Sequence record: OM718002.1 | Strand: one strand, 5' to 3' | DNA length: 64,000 nucleotides | Shown: positions 17,132 through 27,010 of the stretch, in pieces | Position numbering within the stretch: the first letter of the stretch is position 1 | Layout of the letters: each line of letters starts with the position of its first letter | Program-made: the position numbers and the translations under genes | The notes under the pieces: model-generated | The model's input: only the letters and a program-made list of their open reading frames with translations | The model's database searches: none | What the model was told of the DNA's origin: nothing

Positions 17132-18007
<876 letters not shown>

Positions 18008-18015
18008 GGTGTGTA

Positions 18016-18459
18016 ATGGCTGATACAAGAGCTGAATTAGTAGCTGCTTGGAATGTGGCTAATAAACCTAAAGATAATAATGGTAAGCCTAGGGATTTAA
18101 CTGTTGATGATGTTGAATTTATAGGGACTGATACATTCTTAGCAACTGGTACAAATGCCAAAACAACAATGAGAGCGAAGACCAGTTCACTTTATTTTAA
18201 AGGTGAGACAGTTATTTACTTTAATAGACGCTCTTTACCAGAGTACTGTCTTGGTATAAAAGTACCGGGTAAACCAACTGACTATACTGATAATTTAGAA
18301 GTAGCTGAAAAATTAAGAGATGTTTACGGTATTCCATTTATTATAGATGAGATACAACCGCAACCTATTACTGGGAATACGGTTACGATACATCCATACT
18401 TTAATAACTTGTCGTGGATACCAACAATACCAGTAACTCTTGAATTTGAAAGCAGTTAA
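18016..18459 (+). CDS. Virion structural protein (gp126-like)
   Basis: GAGGTG RBS; IYFNRRSL motif resembles the preceding gene's domain. Confidence 0.6.
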   Translation: MADTRAELVAAWNVANKPKDNNGKPRDLTVDDVEFIGTDTFLATGTNAKTTMRAKTSSLYFKGETVIYFNRRSLPEYCLGIKVPGKPTDYTDNLEVAEKLRDVYGIPFIIDEIQPQPITGNTVTIHPYFNNLSWIPTIPVTLEFESS

Positions 18460-21437: not shown

Positions 21438-23069
21438 TTATTTTGCACGGAACATTAATTGAGCGTTGTCAATTATTTCACGCACTTCTTCACGACGTTC
21501 AACTAGTCCAGTTGGACCCACTTTGGTATACATATTAAGCCTACCTCGACCATCCGGGTTGTTCTTAGGTTGGTTTTTATATTGACCTACCTCAGCAATA
21601 GATGCGTGAATAATCCTAGATGAGTCATTGATTAGAGACTTATTATGAGCCTTAGCTGTTTTAGCGCGATCCTGTGTAACTAGGATAGATGTCCCTTTAA
21701 TCAACATACTGGAGTTTGGATTACTCATTGTATCGAGTTCACCATGGTCCACTGTTAATCGTTTAATAGCTGTCTGTAGTTTAAAAGAACGTTTTAAACC
21801 TTCGTTTAGCTCTTGTACAGTCCATTCACGATCACGCCTAGACTGGAACATATAACCAAACATACTTACAGCATAGTTAAACTCTGACATCAAGTAATGC
21901 AGTACTGTTAACCTTTTACCATACATACTAGTTTCATCAATATCAGTAGCATAAAGATGATGAGCCAAACTAGTCATGATCTCGTAAAGAAGTTCCCAAA
22001 TAGTACTTACATTGACACCAACTGTTTTAAGTTCTTCAATAGTCATTTCGTCTAGTGAATTACAGAAACTGTGTAGGTGTGAATCAATGTTTTCCTCTAC
22101 TTTACCTTGGTGCTCAAAATCACCAAACACCATGTGACCTAGGATAACACGCCATAAGTTGGTACTATCTACATATTCAGGTCGAGTAAACCGCATTGGA
22201 AATGCATCGACCACATACCAGAAACCAGCGATAAGTCGTGTGGCAAAAATAGATTCTTGATGACGAGGTATAACAAGAACCATTTCACCGGTGGGATGTT
22301 TGCCTTTTAATGTTGCACTGGAATAAATATTCCACTTTTCACGTGGATATTCTTCTTCAGGAAAATCAGACAGCAGTCCACACTTAACATCTACATTAGC
22401 CCATTGTTTGAAAGTTTGAGTTACTCCAAACTGACAGAAGAAATAATGAGCTAAACATGACTCAATATGTGGTCGATTATCCAGATCTCGTTTAGTACGC
22501 TTAGCCATTTCATTGTGAATCTGTGACCAGATCACATACATGATTTTACGCTGACCATTGCACATGTAATGGTGGTCAGTTTGTTTAAAGGTTAGCTTAG
22601 TACGACGAAACGGGATGAAGATGCTATCATTAAGTACAGAGAACCCAACATCAGTTAATACTGGTGAACCGATATATTTCGCACCATTGATAGTTACCAT
22701 ATTGCCTCTCTTGAAAGCTGGTAACAACATTGGACGAGGATAAAGCATTTCCCCTTTATAACTAAACATTAGGTCAATCATGTACATGTCAGTTGGAGCA
22801 ATATTGGCAATACGCTTAGCATTATATTCCCGAGTAATCTCTTCAAAATGCTTAAGCGGTGTACATGCACGATTGCCTTCATATTTGAAGCCATCGGGAA
22901 ATAGAACTGAACTGATATCAAATAAAGAATCAATATAACGCCTGGTCATATTAACACCAGTATTTGGATCACGAGTCATGGTGTGTTCGACTGTGATACC
23001 ATTTGCTAGTGTTGGATTCATGCAAGGCGTATTTTCACGAATCTTTTCAATTAGAAATGGATCCGGCAT
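21438..23069 (-). CDS. gp123: Non-virion RNA polymerase beta-like subunit, N-terminal part
   Basis: 543 aa; beta-like motifs (VTINGAKYIGSPVL, HASIAEVGQ...PDGRGRLN); AGGAG RBS. Confidence 0.88.
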   Translation of the reverse strand: MPDPFLIEKIRENTPCMNPTLANGITVEHTMTRDPNTGVNMTRRYIDSLFDISSVLFPDGFKYEGNRACTPLKHFEEITREYNAKRIANIAPTDMYMIDLMFSYKGEMLYPRPMLLPAFKRGNMVTINGAKYIGSPVLTDVGFSVLNDSIFIPFRRTKLTFKQTDHHYMCNGQRKIMYVIWSQIHNEMAKRTKRDLDNRPHIESCLAHYFFCQFGVTQTFKQWANVDVKCGLLSDFPEEEYPREKWNIYSSATLKGKHPTGEMVLVIPRHQESIFATRLIAGFWYVVDAFPMRFTRPEYVDSTNLWRVILGHMVFGDFEHQGKVEENIDSHLHSFCNSLDEMTIEELKTVGVNVSTIWELLYEIMTSLAHHLYATDIDETSMYGKRLTVLHYLMSEFNYAVSMFGYMFQSRRDREWTVQELNEGLKRSFKLQTAIKRLTVDHGELDTMSNPNSSMLIKGTSILVTQDRAKTAKAHNKSLINDSSRIIHASIAEVGQYKNQPKNNPDGRGRLNMYTKVGPTGLVERREEVREIIDNAQLMFRAK

Positions 23070-23078
23070 TATAAACTC

Positions 23079-24161
23079 CTAAACTTTTGGCAAAATTAAA
23101 TCCATCAGTGAACCTACAATTTTAATGGATGATACTAGATCAGAGGCAATGGAGTTTAGATCACCCCATTTTAGACCATGAATCAATACAACATCTTTTG
23201 GTTTGAATTCTTTATCAAACGTACCAGCTGCTTTTTCCTGGGCTTCCCTTTCCTTAATATCAGCCGCTGTTAAGAGTGCAGTCTTAAGACGTTCAATAAC
23301 TTTCTTATCTTTAATTCCAACCATTGCAGCAGCTTCTTCATGTGTTCTAAAGAAACCATTTTCATGGAACTGTTCAGGAGGTATTACATATCTCTTTTCG
23401 CCATTATGACTAATACATCCATGCTTACCACGGATATTAACAATAAGACCAGGATCTAATGATGGATTGTAGATTGACTCAATGGCCATAATTCTGCCAG
23501 CCATTACATAAAACAATTTATCTGGTTTATTGATGTCAGTATTATACGTTAAAGAATATGTTTCATTCCATACTTGATTAGAAAGTGCTTCTTCTTCTGG
23601 ACTAAGTCCGCTGTAACCAGGAGGACTAATATTTCTATTTGGATAAAATTCAAAATACTGACTATACTCAGTTTTAAATACTTGGATACCTAAACTCTGA
23701 ATCCAACCACCATGATACTGATCTACTAGTTTTGATAAGTCAATTGAATACCAAATAGTAATCTCAGATAGCTGGTTATTAAACTGATCGAATGTCTGTC
23801 GACTAAACGACTGAATATATTCTAACATTTCCTCAGGTGTAAAACCTGGAATAGATTTAGCCATAACTTCATAGTTAAAACTATCATCACCACTCCATCG
23901 GTAAATGACCTTAACTACTAGTCTATTAGACATTACATACTTACGGGATGTCCCAATATTGATAGCGTGACCAGATGAATCGACTACAGTAATACGATGA
24001 AATGATTCATTCCGATACTCAACAAAACGTGAGACAGGGAGATTCCAATTAGCGTATGGATCACCCTTAGTGTATGCAGTTCCCGATTTCTTATCATACG
24101 GGTGATCGATAGTAGGCTTAACTGATACTTGAGTAAGCCCCGCAATTTTTAGTGTTACCAT
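23079..24161 (-). CDS. Hypothetical protein (gp122-like), 360 aa
   Basis: Long ORF in the early operon with gp123. Confidence 0.7.
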   Translation of the reverse strand: MVTLKIAGLTQVSVKPTIDHPYDKKSGTAYTKGDPYANWNLPVSRFVEYRNESFHRITVVDSSGHAINIGTSRKYVMSNRLVVKVIYRWSGDDSFNYEVMAKSIPGFTPEEMLEYIQSFSRQTFDQFNNQLSEITIWYSIDLSKLVDQYHGGWIQSLGIQVFKTEYSQYFEFYPNRNISPPGYSGLSPEEEALSNQVWNETYSLTYNTDINKPDKLFYVMAGRIMAIESIYNPSLDPGLIVNIRGKHGCISHNGEKRYVIPPEQFHENGFFRTHEEAAAMVGIKDKKVIERLKTALLTAADIKEREAQEKAAGTFDKEFKPKDVVLIHGLKWGDLNSIASDLVSSIKIVGSLMDLILPKV

Positions 24162-24570
24162 TGAAATCTACCTTAATCACAACGGCCTCCAAATCTACAA
24201 TGTTGGGGAGCCTCTTTTTAGTTTGATGTACGGACCTTCCCTTAAAGGATTCACTCTTTTCCTTATTACTTGATTTCTGCCATTTATGCGGGTCACTCGA
24301 ACAATATAACTTTTCGGTGGCCCGCTTAAACTGTTTTTCTTGAAGGATCTCCTCAATGTTTTTCTTGGCATAATCAGTAATAAAGTCCTCTAGCCCTTTG
24401 GGCATAAAGGCATCCTGAACAGGATGGAATTCTTCAAAGAAAGTATTAATGTATTTATCATCATCTACGGTAGACATCTTATTATCTACCATGGTATTTT
24501 TTTCTATAAGAGATACCCTTAGGGCATCTTGCCATCTTTCGATGACTTCTGGAAATAATTGAACGTTCAT
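24118..24570 (-). CDS. Hypothetical protein (gp121-like), 150 aa
   Basis: First ORF after an early promoter; 44-nt overlap with the next gene. Confidence 0.65.
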   Translation of the reverse strand: MNVQLFPEVIERWQDALRVSLIEKNTMVDNKMSTVDDDKYINTFFEEFHPVQDAFMPKGLEDFITDYAKKNIEEILQEKQFKRATEKLYCSSDPHKWQKSSNKEKSESFKGRSVHQTKKRLPNIVDLEAVVIKVDFNGNTKNCGAYSSIS

Positions 24571-24613
24571 TTGGATTAACCTATTTTTAAATTAGAAGAT
24601 CATGATCATTACT

Positions 24614-24621
24614 GTAATATA
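24614..24621 (-). promoter_or_regulatory. phiKZ-type early (virion RNAP) promoter core TATATTAC
   Basis: AAAAAAGTTTAAGATC-TATATTAC on the - strand, 44 nt upstream of the operon containing nvRNAP gp123. Confidence 0.7.
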
Positions 24622-24656
24622 GATCTTAAACTTTTTTTAATGTAATACAACATAAA

Positions 24657-24676
24657 GCCCTCCCCGAAGGGAGGGC
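24657..24676 (-). terminator. Capsid gene terminator, cUUCGg loop
   Basis: GCCCTCCC-TTCG-GGGAGGGC-TTTATG on the - strand. Confidence 0.82.
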
Positions 24677-24685
24677 CTATGTCTG

Positions 24686-24766
24686 TTACTCTTCTAACTT
24701 CCGGGCATTACCGTCTTCCAAATAACGGATAGTCCCATTTTCTAGATAACGGTAACCCTTTCCAGC
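24686..24766 (-). other. In-frame 26-codon extension after the capsid UGA (candidate readthrough tail AGKGYRYLENGTIRYLEDGNARKLEE)
   Basis: Translated by hand; open from 24766 to TAA at 24688-24686; internal peptide repeat; no ATG or RBS of its own. Confidence 0.6.
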
Positions 24767-27010
24767 TCACGGCTTAAGATCAGCAAGCTTACCGTTGAAC
24801 TGAGTTTCGCCCATGACTTTCTGGAAGCCAGTGATCTTGAACTCTAGCGCGAACGGAATGTTGTTGACGTGTAGGTTGAACGGAATGGCCGCGATTTCGC
24901 GAGTAACCTGGTGACCACCACGAGTGATCGGTAGGTCAGCGATAACAGTAGATACGTAGAAGAACTGGCCCCAGGAGAGGATGTCGTTTTCTTGTTGTAC
25001 TGCGCGGGTCGGAATTACAACTAGCTTACCATCAAATAGCTGGTTGTTGGTGGAAACGATATCGTACTTGAGATAAGCACCTAGAGTACGGTCGTCACCT
25101 TTAGTCATTAGATAGTTAGCAATCTCTTTGTCGGAGCAGAAGAGATACATCGGAGTTTCATCCTGGTTACCGGAGATAACACGGAAGGCAGCTTCAATGT
25201 TGGAATCACGGTGAGCCGGGAATAGCTCAGCTTTAACACAGTTTAGGATCGCAGCGCAAACGTCGTCCCAACGATCTTTAGACTTGATGGTGTCGATGAC
25301 TTTCTCAAGATCTAGTTCTTTGTAACGATAGGTCGGACGCATTACAGCGGATAGTGCACCTTCGATGATACCAAACTTCGGACGGTTGTAACCATTGTGT
25401 ACAACTTCACGTAGTTGAGCAAGGTAGTTAAGCATGCGCTTAACAGCGTTGTTGCTGTTACGGATGTTGGTGTTAACAGTTAGAGCTTTAACAACCTCAC
25501 CCGGACCTTCATCGGTCATGGTGTCCATCGGTAGAGTTACAGGAGCGTGCATCGGGATCGGATGACGGAACTGTAGTGCACGGGTCTGTAGTAGGTGACC
25601 ACGCTGACGACGGTTAGTGTTGGTGAAGCGAGTATCTAGTTCGAAACCGATAACAGCTAGGTCAGTTAGCTGATCTAGAATAGCTTTAACAGCCGGGTCA
25701 GCATTATCCATTACCTGGCCATCTTCGTTTAGAACTTTATCGACGTAAGTGTCGGTAGCACCAAACTTAGAATCGCCTTTGGATAGGCTGATAGTACCAC
25801 CAAAACCAACGCTTAGACGTAGGCTTAGTTTAGCAGTCTTAAGGTCGTTAATAACGCCATCAGCTGAACCGTCGATGAAAGTGGTATCGCCACTAACAAC
25901 AAGGTCATCGCTATCGAAACGGATAACTGCGTTCCGGGTATCACCAACTAGATCGGGCTGGAACACAGCGCGAGGTAGACGGTCAACCTTGAACTTAACA
26001 ACTTTACCGCCGAGTAGAACGAATAGGTTCTTTAGACGACCAGCCGGATCAATGGTGTCAGAAACTTCAAGCATGCCACGCTGAATGAGTAGGTTAGCAT
26101 TGGAGTTACCCATTAGATCAAGACGTACGTTCGCTTTTAGCGGAGCAGTAGTGATAGTTAGGTTCTGCTCGTTCTTGATGGTGTACGGAGGAACAAGAGC
26201 CGGGTCTACGAAGAAGTCAGCATTGGAACCAGCCGGATCTAGGGCAGGAATTAGTGCAATGCTTTCGTCGTCGAGGATGGAAGGATCACGATAGGCTTCT
26301 ACCATGTTCACTTCTTCGTTATCCATCTTAACGCCGGATACTTCGTGGTAAACGTCTTTCATTACAGCGATGTAAGGAAGAACCTGAACAACACCACCTT
26401 CAATCGGGTTGATAACGGTGGTCGGATAGATACGCTCAGCGAATTCATCCTGACGGCTAGCAGCTAGGTTATAACCAATAGTTACAACACGGAAATCACG
26501 CTGTGACTTCTCGTTATAGTTCTCTAGGCCAACACCATTTTCGAATACTTGAATGCCACCAGCAGGGCCATTGAACTGATGCTGTACAACCTTAACATGA
26601 TCTTCATTAGAAGCTTTAGCTTTGGTAATACCACGTAGTGCACGGATATATTTAGTTTCATCAGCACAGGCGATAGCAGCCATGGTAGCAGCAGTGATTT
26701 GGTTCTCACGGACACGTTCTTCACGAGCACGTACTTGAGGATCACTGGAACTTACTCGTTCGAAACCATAGTCGTTAACGAGCATTTGCATTTTGTTATA
26801 AATTGCAGCGGCATCTTGAATGTCGGTAGCTTGCACGGTACCGAAGTTTTCATGTGAAATGCTGCTAATAAGGGAACGACCTTGACTAACAACGCTGTCA
26901 TTTAGACCAATTTCACTTTCTAGGCGGCCAATGAAATCTTCCATTGAGAAGACTTCGTAATTCTTTTCGCCTTTGTGTTTAAACAGTTCTCTTAGGGCAT
27001 GTACGCTCAT
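24767..27010 (-). CDS. gp120: Major capsid protein
   Basis: 747 aa; GLE163|NY prohead-protease site; strong high-expression codon bias. Confidence 0.93.
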   Translation of the reverse strand: MSVHALRELFKHKGEKNYEVFSMEDFIGRLESEIGLNDSVVSQGRSLISSISHENFGTVQATDIQDAAAIYNKMQMLVNDYGFERVSSSDPQVRAREERVRENQITAATMAAIACADETKYIRALRGITKAKASNEDHVKVVQHQFNGPAGGIQVFENGVGLENYNEKSQRDFRVVTIGYNLAASRQDEFAERIYPTTVINPIEGGVVQVLPYIAVMKDVYHEVSGVKMDNEEVNMVEAYRDPSILDDESIALIPALDPAGSNADFFVDPALVPPYTIKNEQNLTITTAPLKANVRLDLMGNSNANLLIQRGMLEVSDTIDPAGRLKNLFVLLGGKVVKFKVDRLPRAVFQPDLVGDTRNAVIRFDSDDLVVSGDTTFIDGSADGVINDLKTAKLSLRLSVGFGGTISLSKGDSKFGATDTYVDKVLNEDGQVMDNADPAVKAILDQLTDLAVIGFELDTRFTNTNRRQRGHLLQTRALQFRHPIPMHAPVTLPMDTMTDEGPGEVVKALTVNTNIRNSNNAVKRMLNYLAQLREVVHNGYNRPKFGIIEGALSAVMRPTYRYKELDLEKVIDTIKSKDRWDDVCAAILNCVKAELFPAHRDSNIEAAFRVISGNQDETPMYLFCSDKEIANYLMTKGDDRTLGAYLKYDIVSTNNQLFDGKLVVIPTRAVQQENDILSWGQFFYVSTVIADLPITRGGHQVTREIAAIPFNLHVNNIPFALEFKITGFQKVMGETQFNGKLADLKP

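What the first reader, a model, noticed from the sequence alone, without database searches (positions are those of the whole stretch)
24686..24769. Hidden C-terminal extension of the major capsid protein: candidate UGA readthrough isoform
Seen: the capsid ORF ends ...LADLKP-TGA and the same frame stays open for 26 more codons, AGKGYRYLENGTIRYLEDGNARKLEE, ending in TAA. The peptide has an internal repeat (RYLENG / RYLEDG / RKLEE) with differing synonymous codons, which suggests selection at protein level. It has no ATG or RBS of its own. The terminator starts about 10 nt after the second stop, the spacing seen after gp93 and gp97, but about 90 nt after the UGA. Established: capsid isoforms made by recoding exist (Qbeta A1 by UGA readthrough, T7 10B by frameshift), and UGA is the leakiest stop. 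Inference: a fraction of capsid subunits carry a 27-residue tail that could act as a decoration or docking peptide. I do not recall this being described for phiKZ-like phages.
Basis: partly seen in the sequence, partly recalled or inferred. Interest (0 to 1): 0.9.

Follow-up and report, generated by a model that had tools for sequence, protein, structure and literature searches.

The report
Conserved readthrough tail on phiKZ capsid protein
The major capsid gene of phage phiKZ and its relatives ends in a leaky UGA stop followed, in the same frame, by a short peptide that evolution has kept, so some capsid subunits probably carry a hidden tail that has not been described.

Summary
The window is phiKZ. 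Capsid gene gp120 (24770-27010, minus strand) ends in TGA, 26 in-frame sense codons follow, then TAA, then the terminator.

In one genome this is not remarkable: 18% of phiKZ ORFs have 26 or more open codons after their stop. The comparison is what matters. Among 58 distinct capsid 3' ends, 28 carry the same peptide pattern (linker, then RxLE[D/N]Gxx twice, then RxLE), and all 28 have TGA. Twenty-six without it have TAA (Fisher p 8e-12). On the capsid tree, loss of the extension and a switch to TAA go together.

Invariant Arg, Glu and Gly columns keep a free third codon position. Indels are in whole codons. No start codon is conserved.

The same tail is the ordinary C-terminus of the virion protein gp143 family (DUF7941). 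Two distant relatives have an Ig-like Big_2 domain at this position.

I found no suppressor tRNA, no conserved RNA structure, and no paper describing this.

Best reading: selected UGA readthrough makes a minor capsid isoform with an exposed docking tail. No protein evidence exists yet, and the tail's function is inferred.

The parts
24770..27010 (-). Major capsid protein gene gp120 (747 codons), the upstream part of the proposed readthrough unit.
   Evidence: ORF list. Pfam PF25620 PhiKZ_MCP, 758.7 bits. 100% identical to PHIKZ120.
24767..24769 (-). First stop codon, UGA, followed by G. This is the proposed leaky stop. The last sense codon is Pro.
   Evidence: TGA in 28 of 28 relatives that carry the tail; the fourth base is A in 19, G in 8, C in 1 and T in none.
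24689..24766 (-). 26-codon in-frame extension: a short Gly-Lys-Gly linker, then two RxLE(D/N)Gxx units and a final RxLE unit.
   Evidence: Conserved in frame across genera. Invariant R, E, G, G columns with a variable third position. A profile of the extensions matches gp143-family tails at 25-32 bits in four of the six orthologues searched (Psa21 14 bits, 201phi2-1 no hit), against 7.8 bits or less for background.
24686..24688 (-). Second stop codon, UAA, which ends the extension.
   Evidence: In every relative the second stop lies a few to about 60 nt before the terminator hairpin.
24703..24758 (-). RNA hairpin inside the extension, starting about 11 nt after the UGA. Its role is unproven; it may be a by-product of self-complementary Arg and Asp-Gly codons.
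   Evidence: For the phiKZ extension alone, z is -4.7; the mean z over 27 relatives is -1.97. RNAalifold finds no covariation.
24645..24678 (-). Intrinsic terminator of the capsid transcript (10-pair stem, 4-nt loop, U-rich tail). The mRNA therefore contains the whole extension.
   Evidence: An equivalent hairpin follows the extension in all relatives.

Best explanation
The capsid mRNA runs through the extension to the terminator. Most ribosomes stop at UGA and make the 747-residue capsid protein. A minority decode UGA with a near-cognate host tRNA and add 27 residues: one at the UGA plus the 26 encoded ones. This gives a minor capsid isoform. The added piece is a short flexible linker followed by three RxLE(D/N)G-type units, the same tail that ends the DUF7941 virion protein gp143. 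The capsid C-terminal arm sits at the capsomer centre, and in pentons it touches the external protein gp244. The tail is therefore probably exposed on the outside of a few capsomers per head, where it serves as a docking peptide for whatever also recognises the gp143 tail. Shown: the anatomy, conservation of the peptide, coupling of the tail to TGA, the shared motif, and the absence of a start codon, suppressor tRNA or covarying RNA element. Inferred: that readthrough happens, its frequency, surface exposure, and the docking function.
For: (1) The extension is present in frame after the capsid stop in 28 distinct lineages whose capsid C-terminal parts (last 200-300 residues) are down to about 58-61% identical. 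It is 24-30 codons long, with indels in whole codons.
(2) Across 22 of these sequences the other two frames hold 34 and 30 stops in the same stretch.
(3) Columns R7, E10, G12 and G21 are invariant; R16 and E19 hold in 20 of 21, and R25 in 18 of 21. G12 and G21 use all four GGN codons and R16 uses both CGN and AGR.
(4) pN/pS is 0.62 in frame, against 0.87 and 1.10 in the shifted frames.
(5) Stop codon against tail: TGA with tail 28, TAA without tail 26, TGA without tail 3, TAA with tail 1; Fisher p 8e-12. On the capsid tree there are about 7 changes of tail state, coupled to stop-codon changes.
(6) Three losses inside tail-bearing clades are deletions of the extension with the flanks kept and the stop now TAA.
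(7) The extension profile hits gp143-family C-termini at 32.4, 31.6, 31.3 and 25.9 bits, with a weaker 14.4 bits for Psa21 and no hit for 201phi2-1; the next best hit in 153 kb of phiKZ read in six frames is 7.8 bits. Nearly all of 46 full-length gp143 homologues end in this tail, some with degenerate units.
(8) Relatives L068/L081 and L074 carry a Pfam Big_2 Ig-like domain in frame after the capsid stop, and L074's ends in the same tail.
(9) No in-frame start codon is conserved.
(10) phiKZ tRNAs are Thr, Asn x2, Asp, Met, Pro and Leu only.
(11) The C-terminal arm lies at the capsomer centre and contacts the external gp244 in pentons (PMC11297242).
Against: No peptide, ribosome footprint or cryo-EM density for the extension is on record, and the published capsid model ends at residue 747. 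Constraint is moderate (median dN/dS 0.45, against 0.15 for the capsid's last 100 codons). No relative has a sense codon in place of the stop. The extension has been deleted in several lineages, so it is dispensable. The extension RNAs tend to fold (mean z -1.97), so some conservation could act at RNA level. The sequences are phylogenetically related, so the Fisher p overstates independence. The function and binding partner are untested.
Confidence: 0.75

Rival explanations
1. The stretch is an untranslated 3' region. Its conservation reflects an RNA or DNA element, such as a stabilising hairpin or a protein-binding repeat, and the open frame is a side effect.
For: Extension RNAs fold better than shuffled versions (phiKZ z -4.7, mean -1.97, 9 of 27 below -2). 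Constraint on the peptide is only moderate. There is no protein evidence.
Against: RNAalifold gives -2 kcal/mol with no compensatory pairs and Rfam finds nothing. Third codon positions vary freely at invariant residues, and Arg switches codon family. Indels are in whole codons. The same peptide ends a real protein family. An RNA element would not require TGA rather than TAA.
Confidence: 0.08
2. The extension is a separate tiny gene, translated by its own initiation or by reinitiation after the capsid stop.
For: In relative L081 an ATG lies at codon 3 of a 203-codon extension, so independent initiation is possible there.
Against: In the 28 tail carriers no ATG, GTG or TTG is conserved in frame; the first codons are GCT, ACT, AAG, AGG, GAC and similar. 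No ribosome-binding motif is evident before it. The GTG that overlaps the TGA opens a different frame, which is not conserved. A free 26-residue peptide would not explain the strict in-frame position or the tie to TGA.
Confidence: 0.05
3. The extension is a decaying relic of a once longer capsid C-terminus, cut off by a nonsense mutation and no longer made.
For: Distant capsids have constitutive C-terminal tails of 10-35 residues. L074 has a 95-codon Ig-like extension behind a TAA.
Against: A relic should gather stops and frameshifts. Instead the frame and key residues persist across lineages whose capsid C-terminal parts are only about 58-61% identical. Where the tail is lost it is deleted and the stop becomes TAA.
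Confidence: 0.05
4. The UGA is decoded by a dedicated system, either selenocysteine insertion or a phage suppressor tRNA, rather than by near-cognate leakage.
For: UGA is the codon used by both systems, and a hairpin begins about 11 nt after it in many relatives.
Against: No covarying hairpin and no Rfam hit. phiKZ's seven tRNAs include no UGA reader. 35 of 166 phiKZ ORFs end in TGA, so general suppression would be costly.
Confidence: 0.03

Closest known systems
Q-beta A1 (readthrough coat protein of an ssRNA phage)
   Same: The coat gene ends in a leaky UGA. A small share of subunits carry an in-frame C-terminal extension that is built into the virion (established knowledge, from memory).
   Different: That is an RNA phage with a T=3 coat, a long extension (about 200 residues) and an essential role. 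Here it is a dsDNA jumbo phage with an HK97-fold T=27 capsid and a 26-residue repeat tail that some lineages have lost. There is no sequence relation.
Luteovirid/polerovirus coat-protein readthrough domain
   Same: A minor capsid component made by stop-codon readthrough of the coat gene, exposed on the particle and used for interactions (abstracts of 10.1101/2024.10.14.617924 and PMC6264904, listed).
   Different: Those are eukaryotic plant RNA viruses with a UAG stop, a large structured domain and known RNA stimulators. There is no homology.
Frameshift-derived capsid extensions of tailed phages (T7 10B, T3, Lactobacillus A2, Listeria A118/A500/PSA)
   Same: dsDNA tailed phages make two capsid products from one gene. 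The extension is often an Ig-like surface domain (PMC5009743). Relatives L068 and L074 carry exactly such a Big_2 domain at this position.
   Different: Those use a -1 or +1 frameshift at a slippery site. Here the extension is in frame 0 behind a stop, and the other frames are closed.
C-terminal tail of phiKZ gp143 and its family (DUF7941 N-domain proteins)
   Same: The same three-unit RxLE(D/N)G tail sits at the extreme C-terminus. The profile match is 25-32 bits for four of the six orthologues searched.
   Different: gp143 makes the tail constitutively on a DUF7941 N-domain (Pfam; the fold matches a 150-residue chain of PDB 9xqd, phiKZ outer baseplate, most likely the gp127 N-domain, E 1e-6). 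The capsid gets the tail only by recoding and has no DUF7941 domain.

Membership tests
Stop-codon readthrough capsid isoform (Q-beta A1 type) | The coat gene ends in a leaky stop codon (UGA or UAG). | tested here: met
   TGA in the window and in 28 of 28 tail-bearing relatives. The fourth base is never T.
Stop-codon readthrough capsid isoform (Q-beta A1 type) | An in-frame downstream segment has a conserved coding signature and no start of its own. | tested here: met
Stop-codon readthrough capsid isoform (Q-beta A1 type) | The extended protein is detected and present in virions. | not testable with these tools
   No proteomic or footprint data could be reached, and the papers searched do not mention it.
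Frameshift-derived capsid extension (T7 10B type) | The extension lies in the -1 or +1 frame, reached at a slippery site. | tested here: not met
   The conserved peptide is in frame 0; the +1 and +2 frames carry 34 and 30 stops across 22 sequences.
Selenocysteine recoding | A conserved SECIS hairpin directly after the UGA. | tested here: not met
   No covarying structure and no Rfam match. Individual hairpins exist but are explained by the codons.
Phage stop-codon reassignment by suppressor tRNA | The phage encodes a tRNA that reads the stop. | tested here: not met
   ARAGORN on 153 kb of phiKZ, plus the record's tRNA numbering t01-t07: Thr, Asn x2, Asp, Met, Pro, Leu. 127 kb of the genome was not scanned directly.
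DUF7941 (PF25613) proteins | A DUF7941 globular N-domain. | tested here: not met
   The extension gives no Pfam hit. It shares only the gp143-type tail.
Ig-like (Big_2) capsid decoration appended by recoding | A Big_2 domain in the extension. | tested here: not met
   Not present in phiKZ. Present in relatives L068/L081 (37 bits) and L074 (30 bits), against a cut-off of 22.8.

The most novel reading that the evidence does not exclude
The RxLEDG tail is an address peptide shared by a few capsid subunits and by gp143. It docks on a DUF7941 N-domain or another common receptor. Readthrough would then place anchoring points for gp143/DUF7941 fibres on the head, or it would link the number of heads made to the gp143-holin lysis timer.
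Probability: 0.2. Interest if true: 0.85.

Novelty: new variant of a known kind. Interest (0 to 1): 0.8.

Why it matters
phiKZ is the model jumbo, nucleus-forming phage. Its capsid has been solved at 3.5 A and its virion proteome has been catalogued, yet no paper in the library searched mentions a second capsid isoform.

Minor capsid proteins made by recoding are known from RNA phages (readthrough) and from small tailed phages (frameshift). A conserved UGA readthrough in a dsDNA jumbo phage would extend that principle. It would add a component to the phiKZ head and give a natural example of selected stop-codon leakiness in Pseudomonas.

The shared tail also gives a concrete lead on gp143, a virion protein not located in the phiKZ virion cryo-EM atlas searched here, and on how DUF7941 proteins attach.

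The claim can be tested directly on existing mass-spectrometry and cryo-EM data.

Tried and rejected
- **Second tBLASTn match in each phiKZ genome:** it is the antisense reading of the same stretch, not a second locus.
- **GTG overlapping the TGA** (a 20-codon ORF, 24708-24770): its frame is not conserved in relatives.
- **Covarying RNA structure or known RNA family:** none found.
- **tRNAs:** none in the window, and no suppressor in the phiKZ tRNA cluster.
- **A fused form with a sense codon at the stop:** none among 120 capsid homologues.
- **Goslar's 28-codon extension:** it has no relatives in the phage collection, so its conservation could not be judged.
- **Transcript 3' ends from ONT-cappable-seq:** no supplementary files are held for that paper.
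- **Folding the extension:** not possible. It is 26 residues, below the 30-residue minimum, and it may not be joined to the capsid across the stop. gp143 was folded instead.
- **gp126 and gp127** (DUF7941 proteins in the window, 18016-18459 and 17135-18007): they lack the tail.

Full report
**What is there.** The window is phiKZ: the 541-bp region around the finding (24560-25100) is 100% identical to AF399011. On the minus strand, the major capsid gene gp120 (24770-27010, 747 codons, Pfam PhiKZ_MCP at 758.7 bits) ends Pro-UGA-G. The frame then stays open for 26 codons (24689-24766) up to a UAA (24686-24688). A strong terminator hairpin (24655-24678) starts 8 nt later. The peptide is a short Gly-Lys-Gly linker, two RxLE(D/N)Gxx units and a final RxLE. 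It has no start codon of its own.

**Is it more than chance?** Not within one genome. Among 166 ORFs predicted in 153 kb of phiKZ, 113 end in TAA, 35 in TGA and 18 in TAG, and 18% have at least 26 open codons after the stop. The case rests on comparison.

**Comparison across relatives.** I collected capsid 3' ends from several sources:
- annotated phages;
- IMG/VR;
- metagenomes;
- contigs that encode capsid homologues.

This gave 58 distinct sequences.
- Twenty-eight carry the same peptide pattern directly after the capsid stop, in frame, 24-30 codons long, followed by a second stop and then the terminator. They include phiKZ, PhiPA3, PA1C/PS119XW, Phabio, 201phi2-1, Viktualia, Psa21, RVTF4, Noxifer and uncultured lineages. 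Their capsid C-terminal parts (the last 200-300 residues) are down to about 58-61% identical to phiKZ.
- All 28 have TGA. The fourth base is A in 19, G in 8, C in 1 and T in none. The phiKZ background for TGA-ending ORFs is A 13, G 12, T 9 and C 1.
- Of the 30 others, 26 have TAA and only 0-19 open codons.
- Three have TGA followed by an unrelated in-frame extension: Goslar 28 codons, FLC9 18 codons, L068/L081 203 codons.
- One (L074) has TAA followed by 95 in-frame codons that end in the same tail.
- The Fisher exact p for TGA against tail is 8e-12. The lineages are related, so this overstates independence.
- On a neighbour-joining tree of the capsid, the tail changes state about 7 times and the stop codon about 9 times, and the changes go together.
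- Three losses inside tail-bearing clades (L085, L078, L099) are deletions of most of the extension. The capsid end, terminator and downstream promoter region are kept, and the stop is now TAA.

**Coding signature.**
- Across 22 of these sequences the other two frames contain 34 and 30 stops in the same stretch.
- Length differences are whole codons.
- Columns R7, E10, G12 and G21 are invariant; R16 and E19 hold in 20 of 21 sequences and R25 in 18 of 21.
- The two invariant Gly columns use all four GGN codons. R16 uses both CGN and AGR, and Leu columns use both CTN and TTR.
- pN/pS is 0.62 in frame, against 0.87 and 1.10 in the shifted frames.
- Median dN/dS is 0.45, against 0.15 for the capsid's last 100 codons. 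Constraint is real but moderate, as expected for a short motif tail.
- Within the 47 Phikzvirus genomes the extension is invariant, except that 8 genomes have it one residue shorter. In the three isolates compared base by base, the capsid differences within the 541-bp stretch are all synonymous.

**Alternatives for how it could be read.**
- No in-frame start codon is conserved.
- The GTG that overlaps the UGA opens another frame, which is not conserved.
- RNAalifold finds no covarying structure and Rfam finds nothing. The extension RNAs do fold individually into a hairpin that begins about 11 nt after the UGA (phiKZ z -4.7, mean -1.97). This follows from self-complementary Arg and Asp-Gly codons, and I cannot tell whether it also helps readthrough.
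- phiKZ's tRNAs are Thr, Asn x2, Asp, Met, Pro and Leu, none of which reads UGA.
- From established knowledge (recalled, not tested here): UGA is the leakiest bacterial stop, a C-terminal Pro and a non-U fourth base weaken termination, and tRNA-Trp is the usual near-cognate reader.

**The tail is a real protein module.** The 26-mer also matched the extreme C-terminus of annotated virion structural proteins in Noxifer and Phabio. These are orthologues of phiKZ gp143, which lies just outside the window, upstream of the endolysin gp144.
- Nearly all of 46 full-length gp143 homologues, down to 31% identity, end in the same three-unit tail, some with degenerate units.
- A profile built from 27 capsid extensions scores phiKZ gp143, Noxifer gp141, Phabio gp216 and PhiPA3 gp162 at 32.4, 31.6, 31.3 and 25.9 bits, and Psa21 gp197 at 14.4 bits; 201phi2-1 gp228 gave no hit. 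The best unrelated hit in 153 kb of phiKZ read in six frames is 7.8 bits.
- The gp143 family has a DUF7941 N-domain: two orthologues score above the Pfam cut-off, while phiKZ gp143 itself scores below it. An AlphaFold model has mean pLDDT 90, with the tail at 76-86 and a period-8 beta-bridge pattern. Its only significant PDB match is a 150-residue chain of 9xqd, the phiKZ outer baseplate, most likely the gp127 N-domain (E 1e-6).
- Another paper calls gp143 a regulator of the holin gp142 (PMC12894885).
- gp143 is not mentioned in the phiKZ virion atlas.

**Support from more distant relatives.** In L068/L081 the capsid TGA is followed in frame by a Pfam Big_2 Ig-like domain (37 bits) plus another domain. 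An ATG at codon 3 leaves the mode of translation open. In L074 a Big_2 domain (30 bits) plus the RxxEDG tail follows a TAA with no early start. Ig-like domains added to capsid proteins by recoding are a known theme in tailed phages, so far by frameshifting (PMC5009743). Many distant capsids instead carry constitutive low-complexity C-terminal tails. The capsid C-terminus is therefore a variable display site in this family.

**Where the tail would sit.** In the 3.5 A capsid structure the C-terminal arm (residues 728-747) forms a six-helix bundle with a 9 A pore at each hexamer centre. In pentons it reaches the external protein gp244 (PMC11297242). An extension would therefore project from capsomer centres, most likely outwards. 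At low occupancy it would vanish in symmetric averaging.

**Mechanism and confidence.** Best reading (0.75): selected low-level UGA readthrough makes a minor capsid isoform with an exposed RxLEDG docking tail. The anatomy, conservation, coupling to TGA and shared motif are shown. Readthrough itself, its level, surface exposure and the partner are inferred. The tail is accessory, since several lineages have lost it.

The rivals each fail to explain several observations together:
- an untranslated element (0.08);
- a separate tiny gene (0.05);
- a decaying relic (0.05);
- a dedicated decoding system (0.03).

**Novelty.** Searches for phiKZ with readthrough, jumbo phage with stop-codon readthrough, phiKZ with ribosome profiling, and capsid readthrough in tailed phages found no description of this. 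The two structural papers and the 201phi2-1 transcriptome paper were searched directly and do not mention it either. I class it as a new variant of a known kind: capsid isoforms made by recoding.

Noticed in passing
L081:2498-3112 (IMGVR_UViG_3300043122_000192; same contig as L068): The capsid TGA is followed in frame by 203 codons: a Pfam Big_2 Ig-like domain (37 bits) plus an unknown domain of about 130 residues. An ATG at codon 3 leaves open whether it is read through or started separately.
   Followed up: partly
L074:1393-1683 (IMGVR_UViG_3300037502_002993): The capsid stop is TAA-C, yet 95 in-frame codons follow that encode a Big_2 domain (30 bits) and then the RxxEDG tail, with no early start codon. 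This could be UAA readthrough, a recent nonsense change or an assembly error. It rests on a single contig.
   Followed up: partly
L029:1286-1375 (Goslar) and L032:1295-1354 (Burkholderia phage FLC9): Both capsid genes end in TGA-A with 28 and 18 further in-frame codons before the terminator. The peptides are unrelated to the phiKZ tail. Goslar's has no relatives in the phage collection, so conservation could not be judged.
   Followed up: partly
L037:401-934 (phiKZ gp143, genome 145693-146226, just outside the window): In nearly all homologues gp143 and its family end in the same three-unit RxLE(D/N)G tail on a DUF7941 N-domain. Recent papers call gp143 either a holin regulator or a fibre-cloud protein. 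The tail itself does not seem to have been discussed.
   Followed up: partly
window 24645-24685 and the equivalent place in all relatives: The capsid terminators share conserved flanks (CAUA before the stem, UUUAUG(C/U)CGU after it) that lengthen the stem. This looks like a family-wide terminator design.
   Followed up: no
window 24703-24758, minus strand: The extension RNA forms a long hairpin because the Arg and Asp-Gly codons of the repeat are self-complementary. For the same reason, the antisense translation resembles the peptide itself.
   Followed up: partly
Proteins P0064-P0120 (distant capsid homologues): Many distant phiKZ-type capsids carry constitutive low-complexity C-terminal tails rich in Asp, Glu, Thr, Gly and Pro, 10-35 residues long. 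The capsid C-terminus appears to be a general display site.
   Followed up: no
window 17135-18007 (+) and 18016-18459 (+): gp127 and gp126, the two other DUF7941 proteins of phiKZ, lie in the window (Pfam 98 and 39 bits). They lack the RxLEDG tail but are candidate receptors for it.
   Followed up: partly
window 21438-24161, minus strand: The 360-codon ORF 23079-24161 ends in TAG, and the next ORF (21438-23069) starts three codons later in the same frame. This is probably ordinary gene packing.
   Followed up: no
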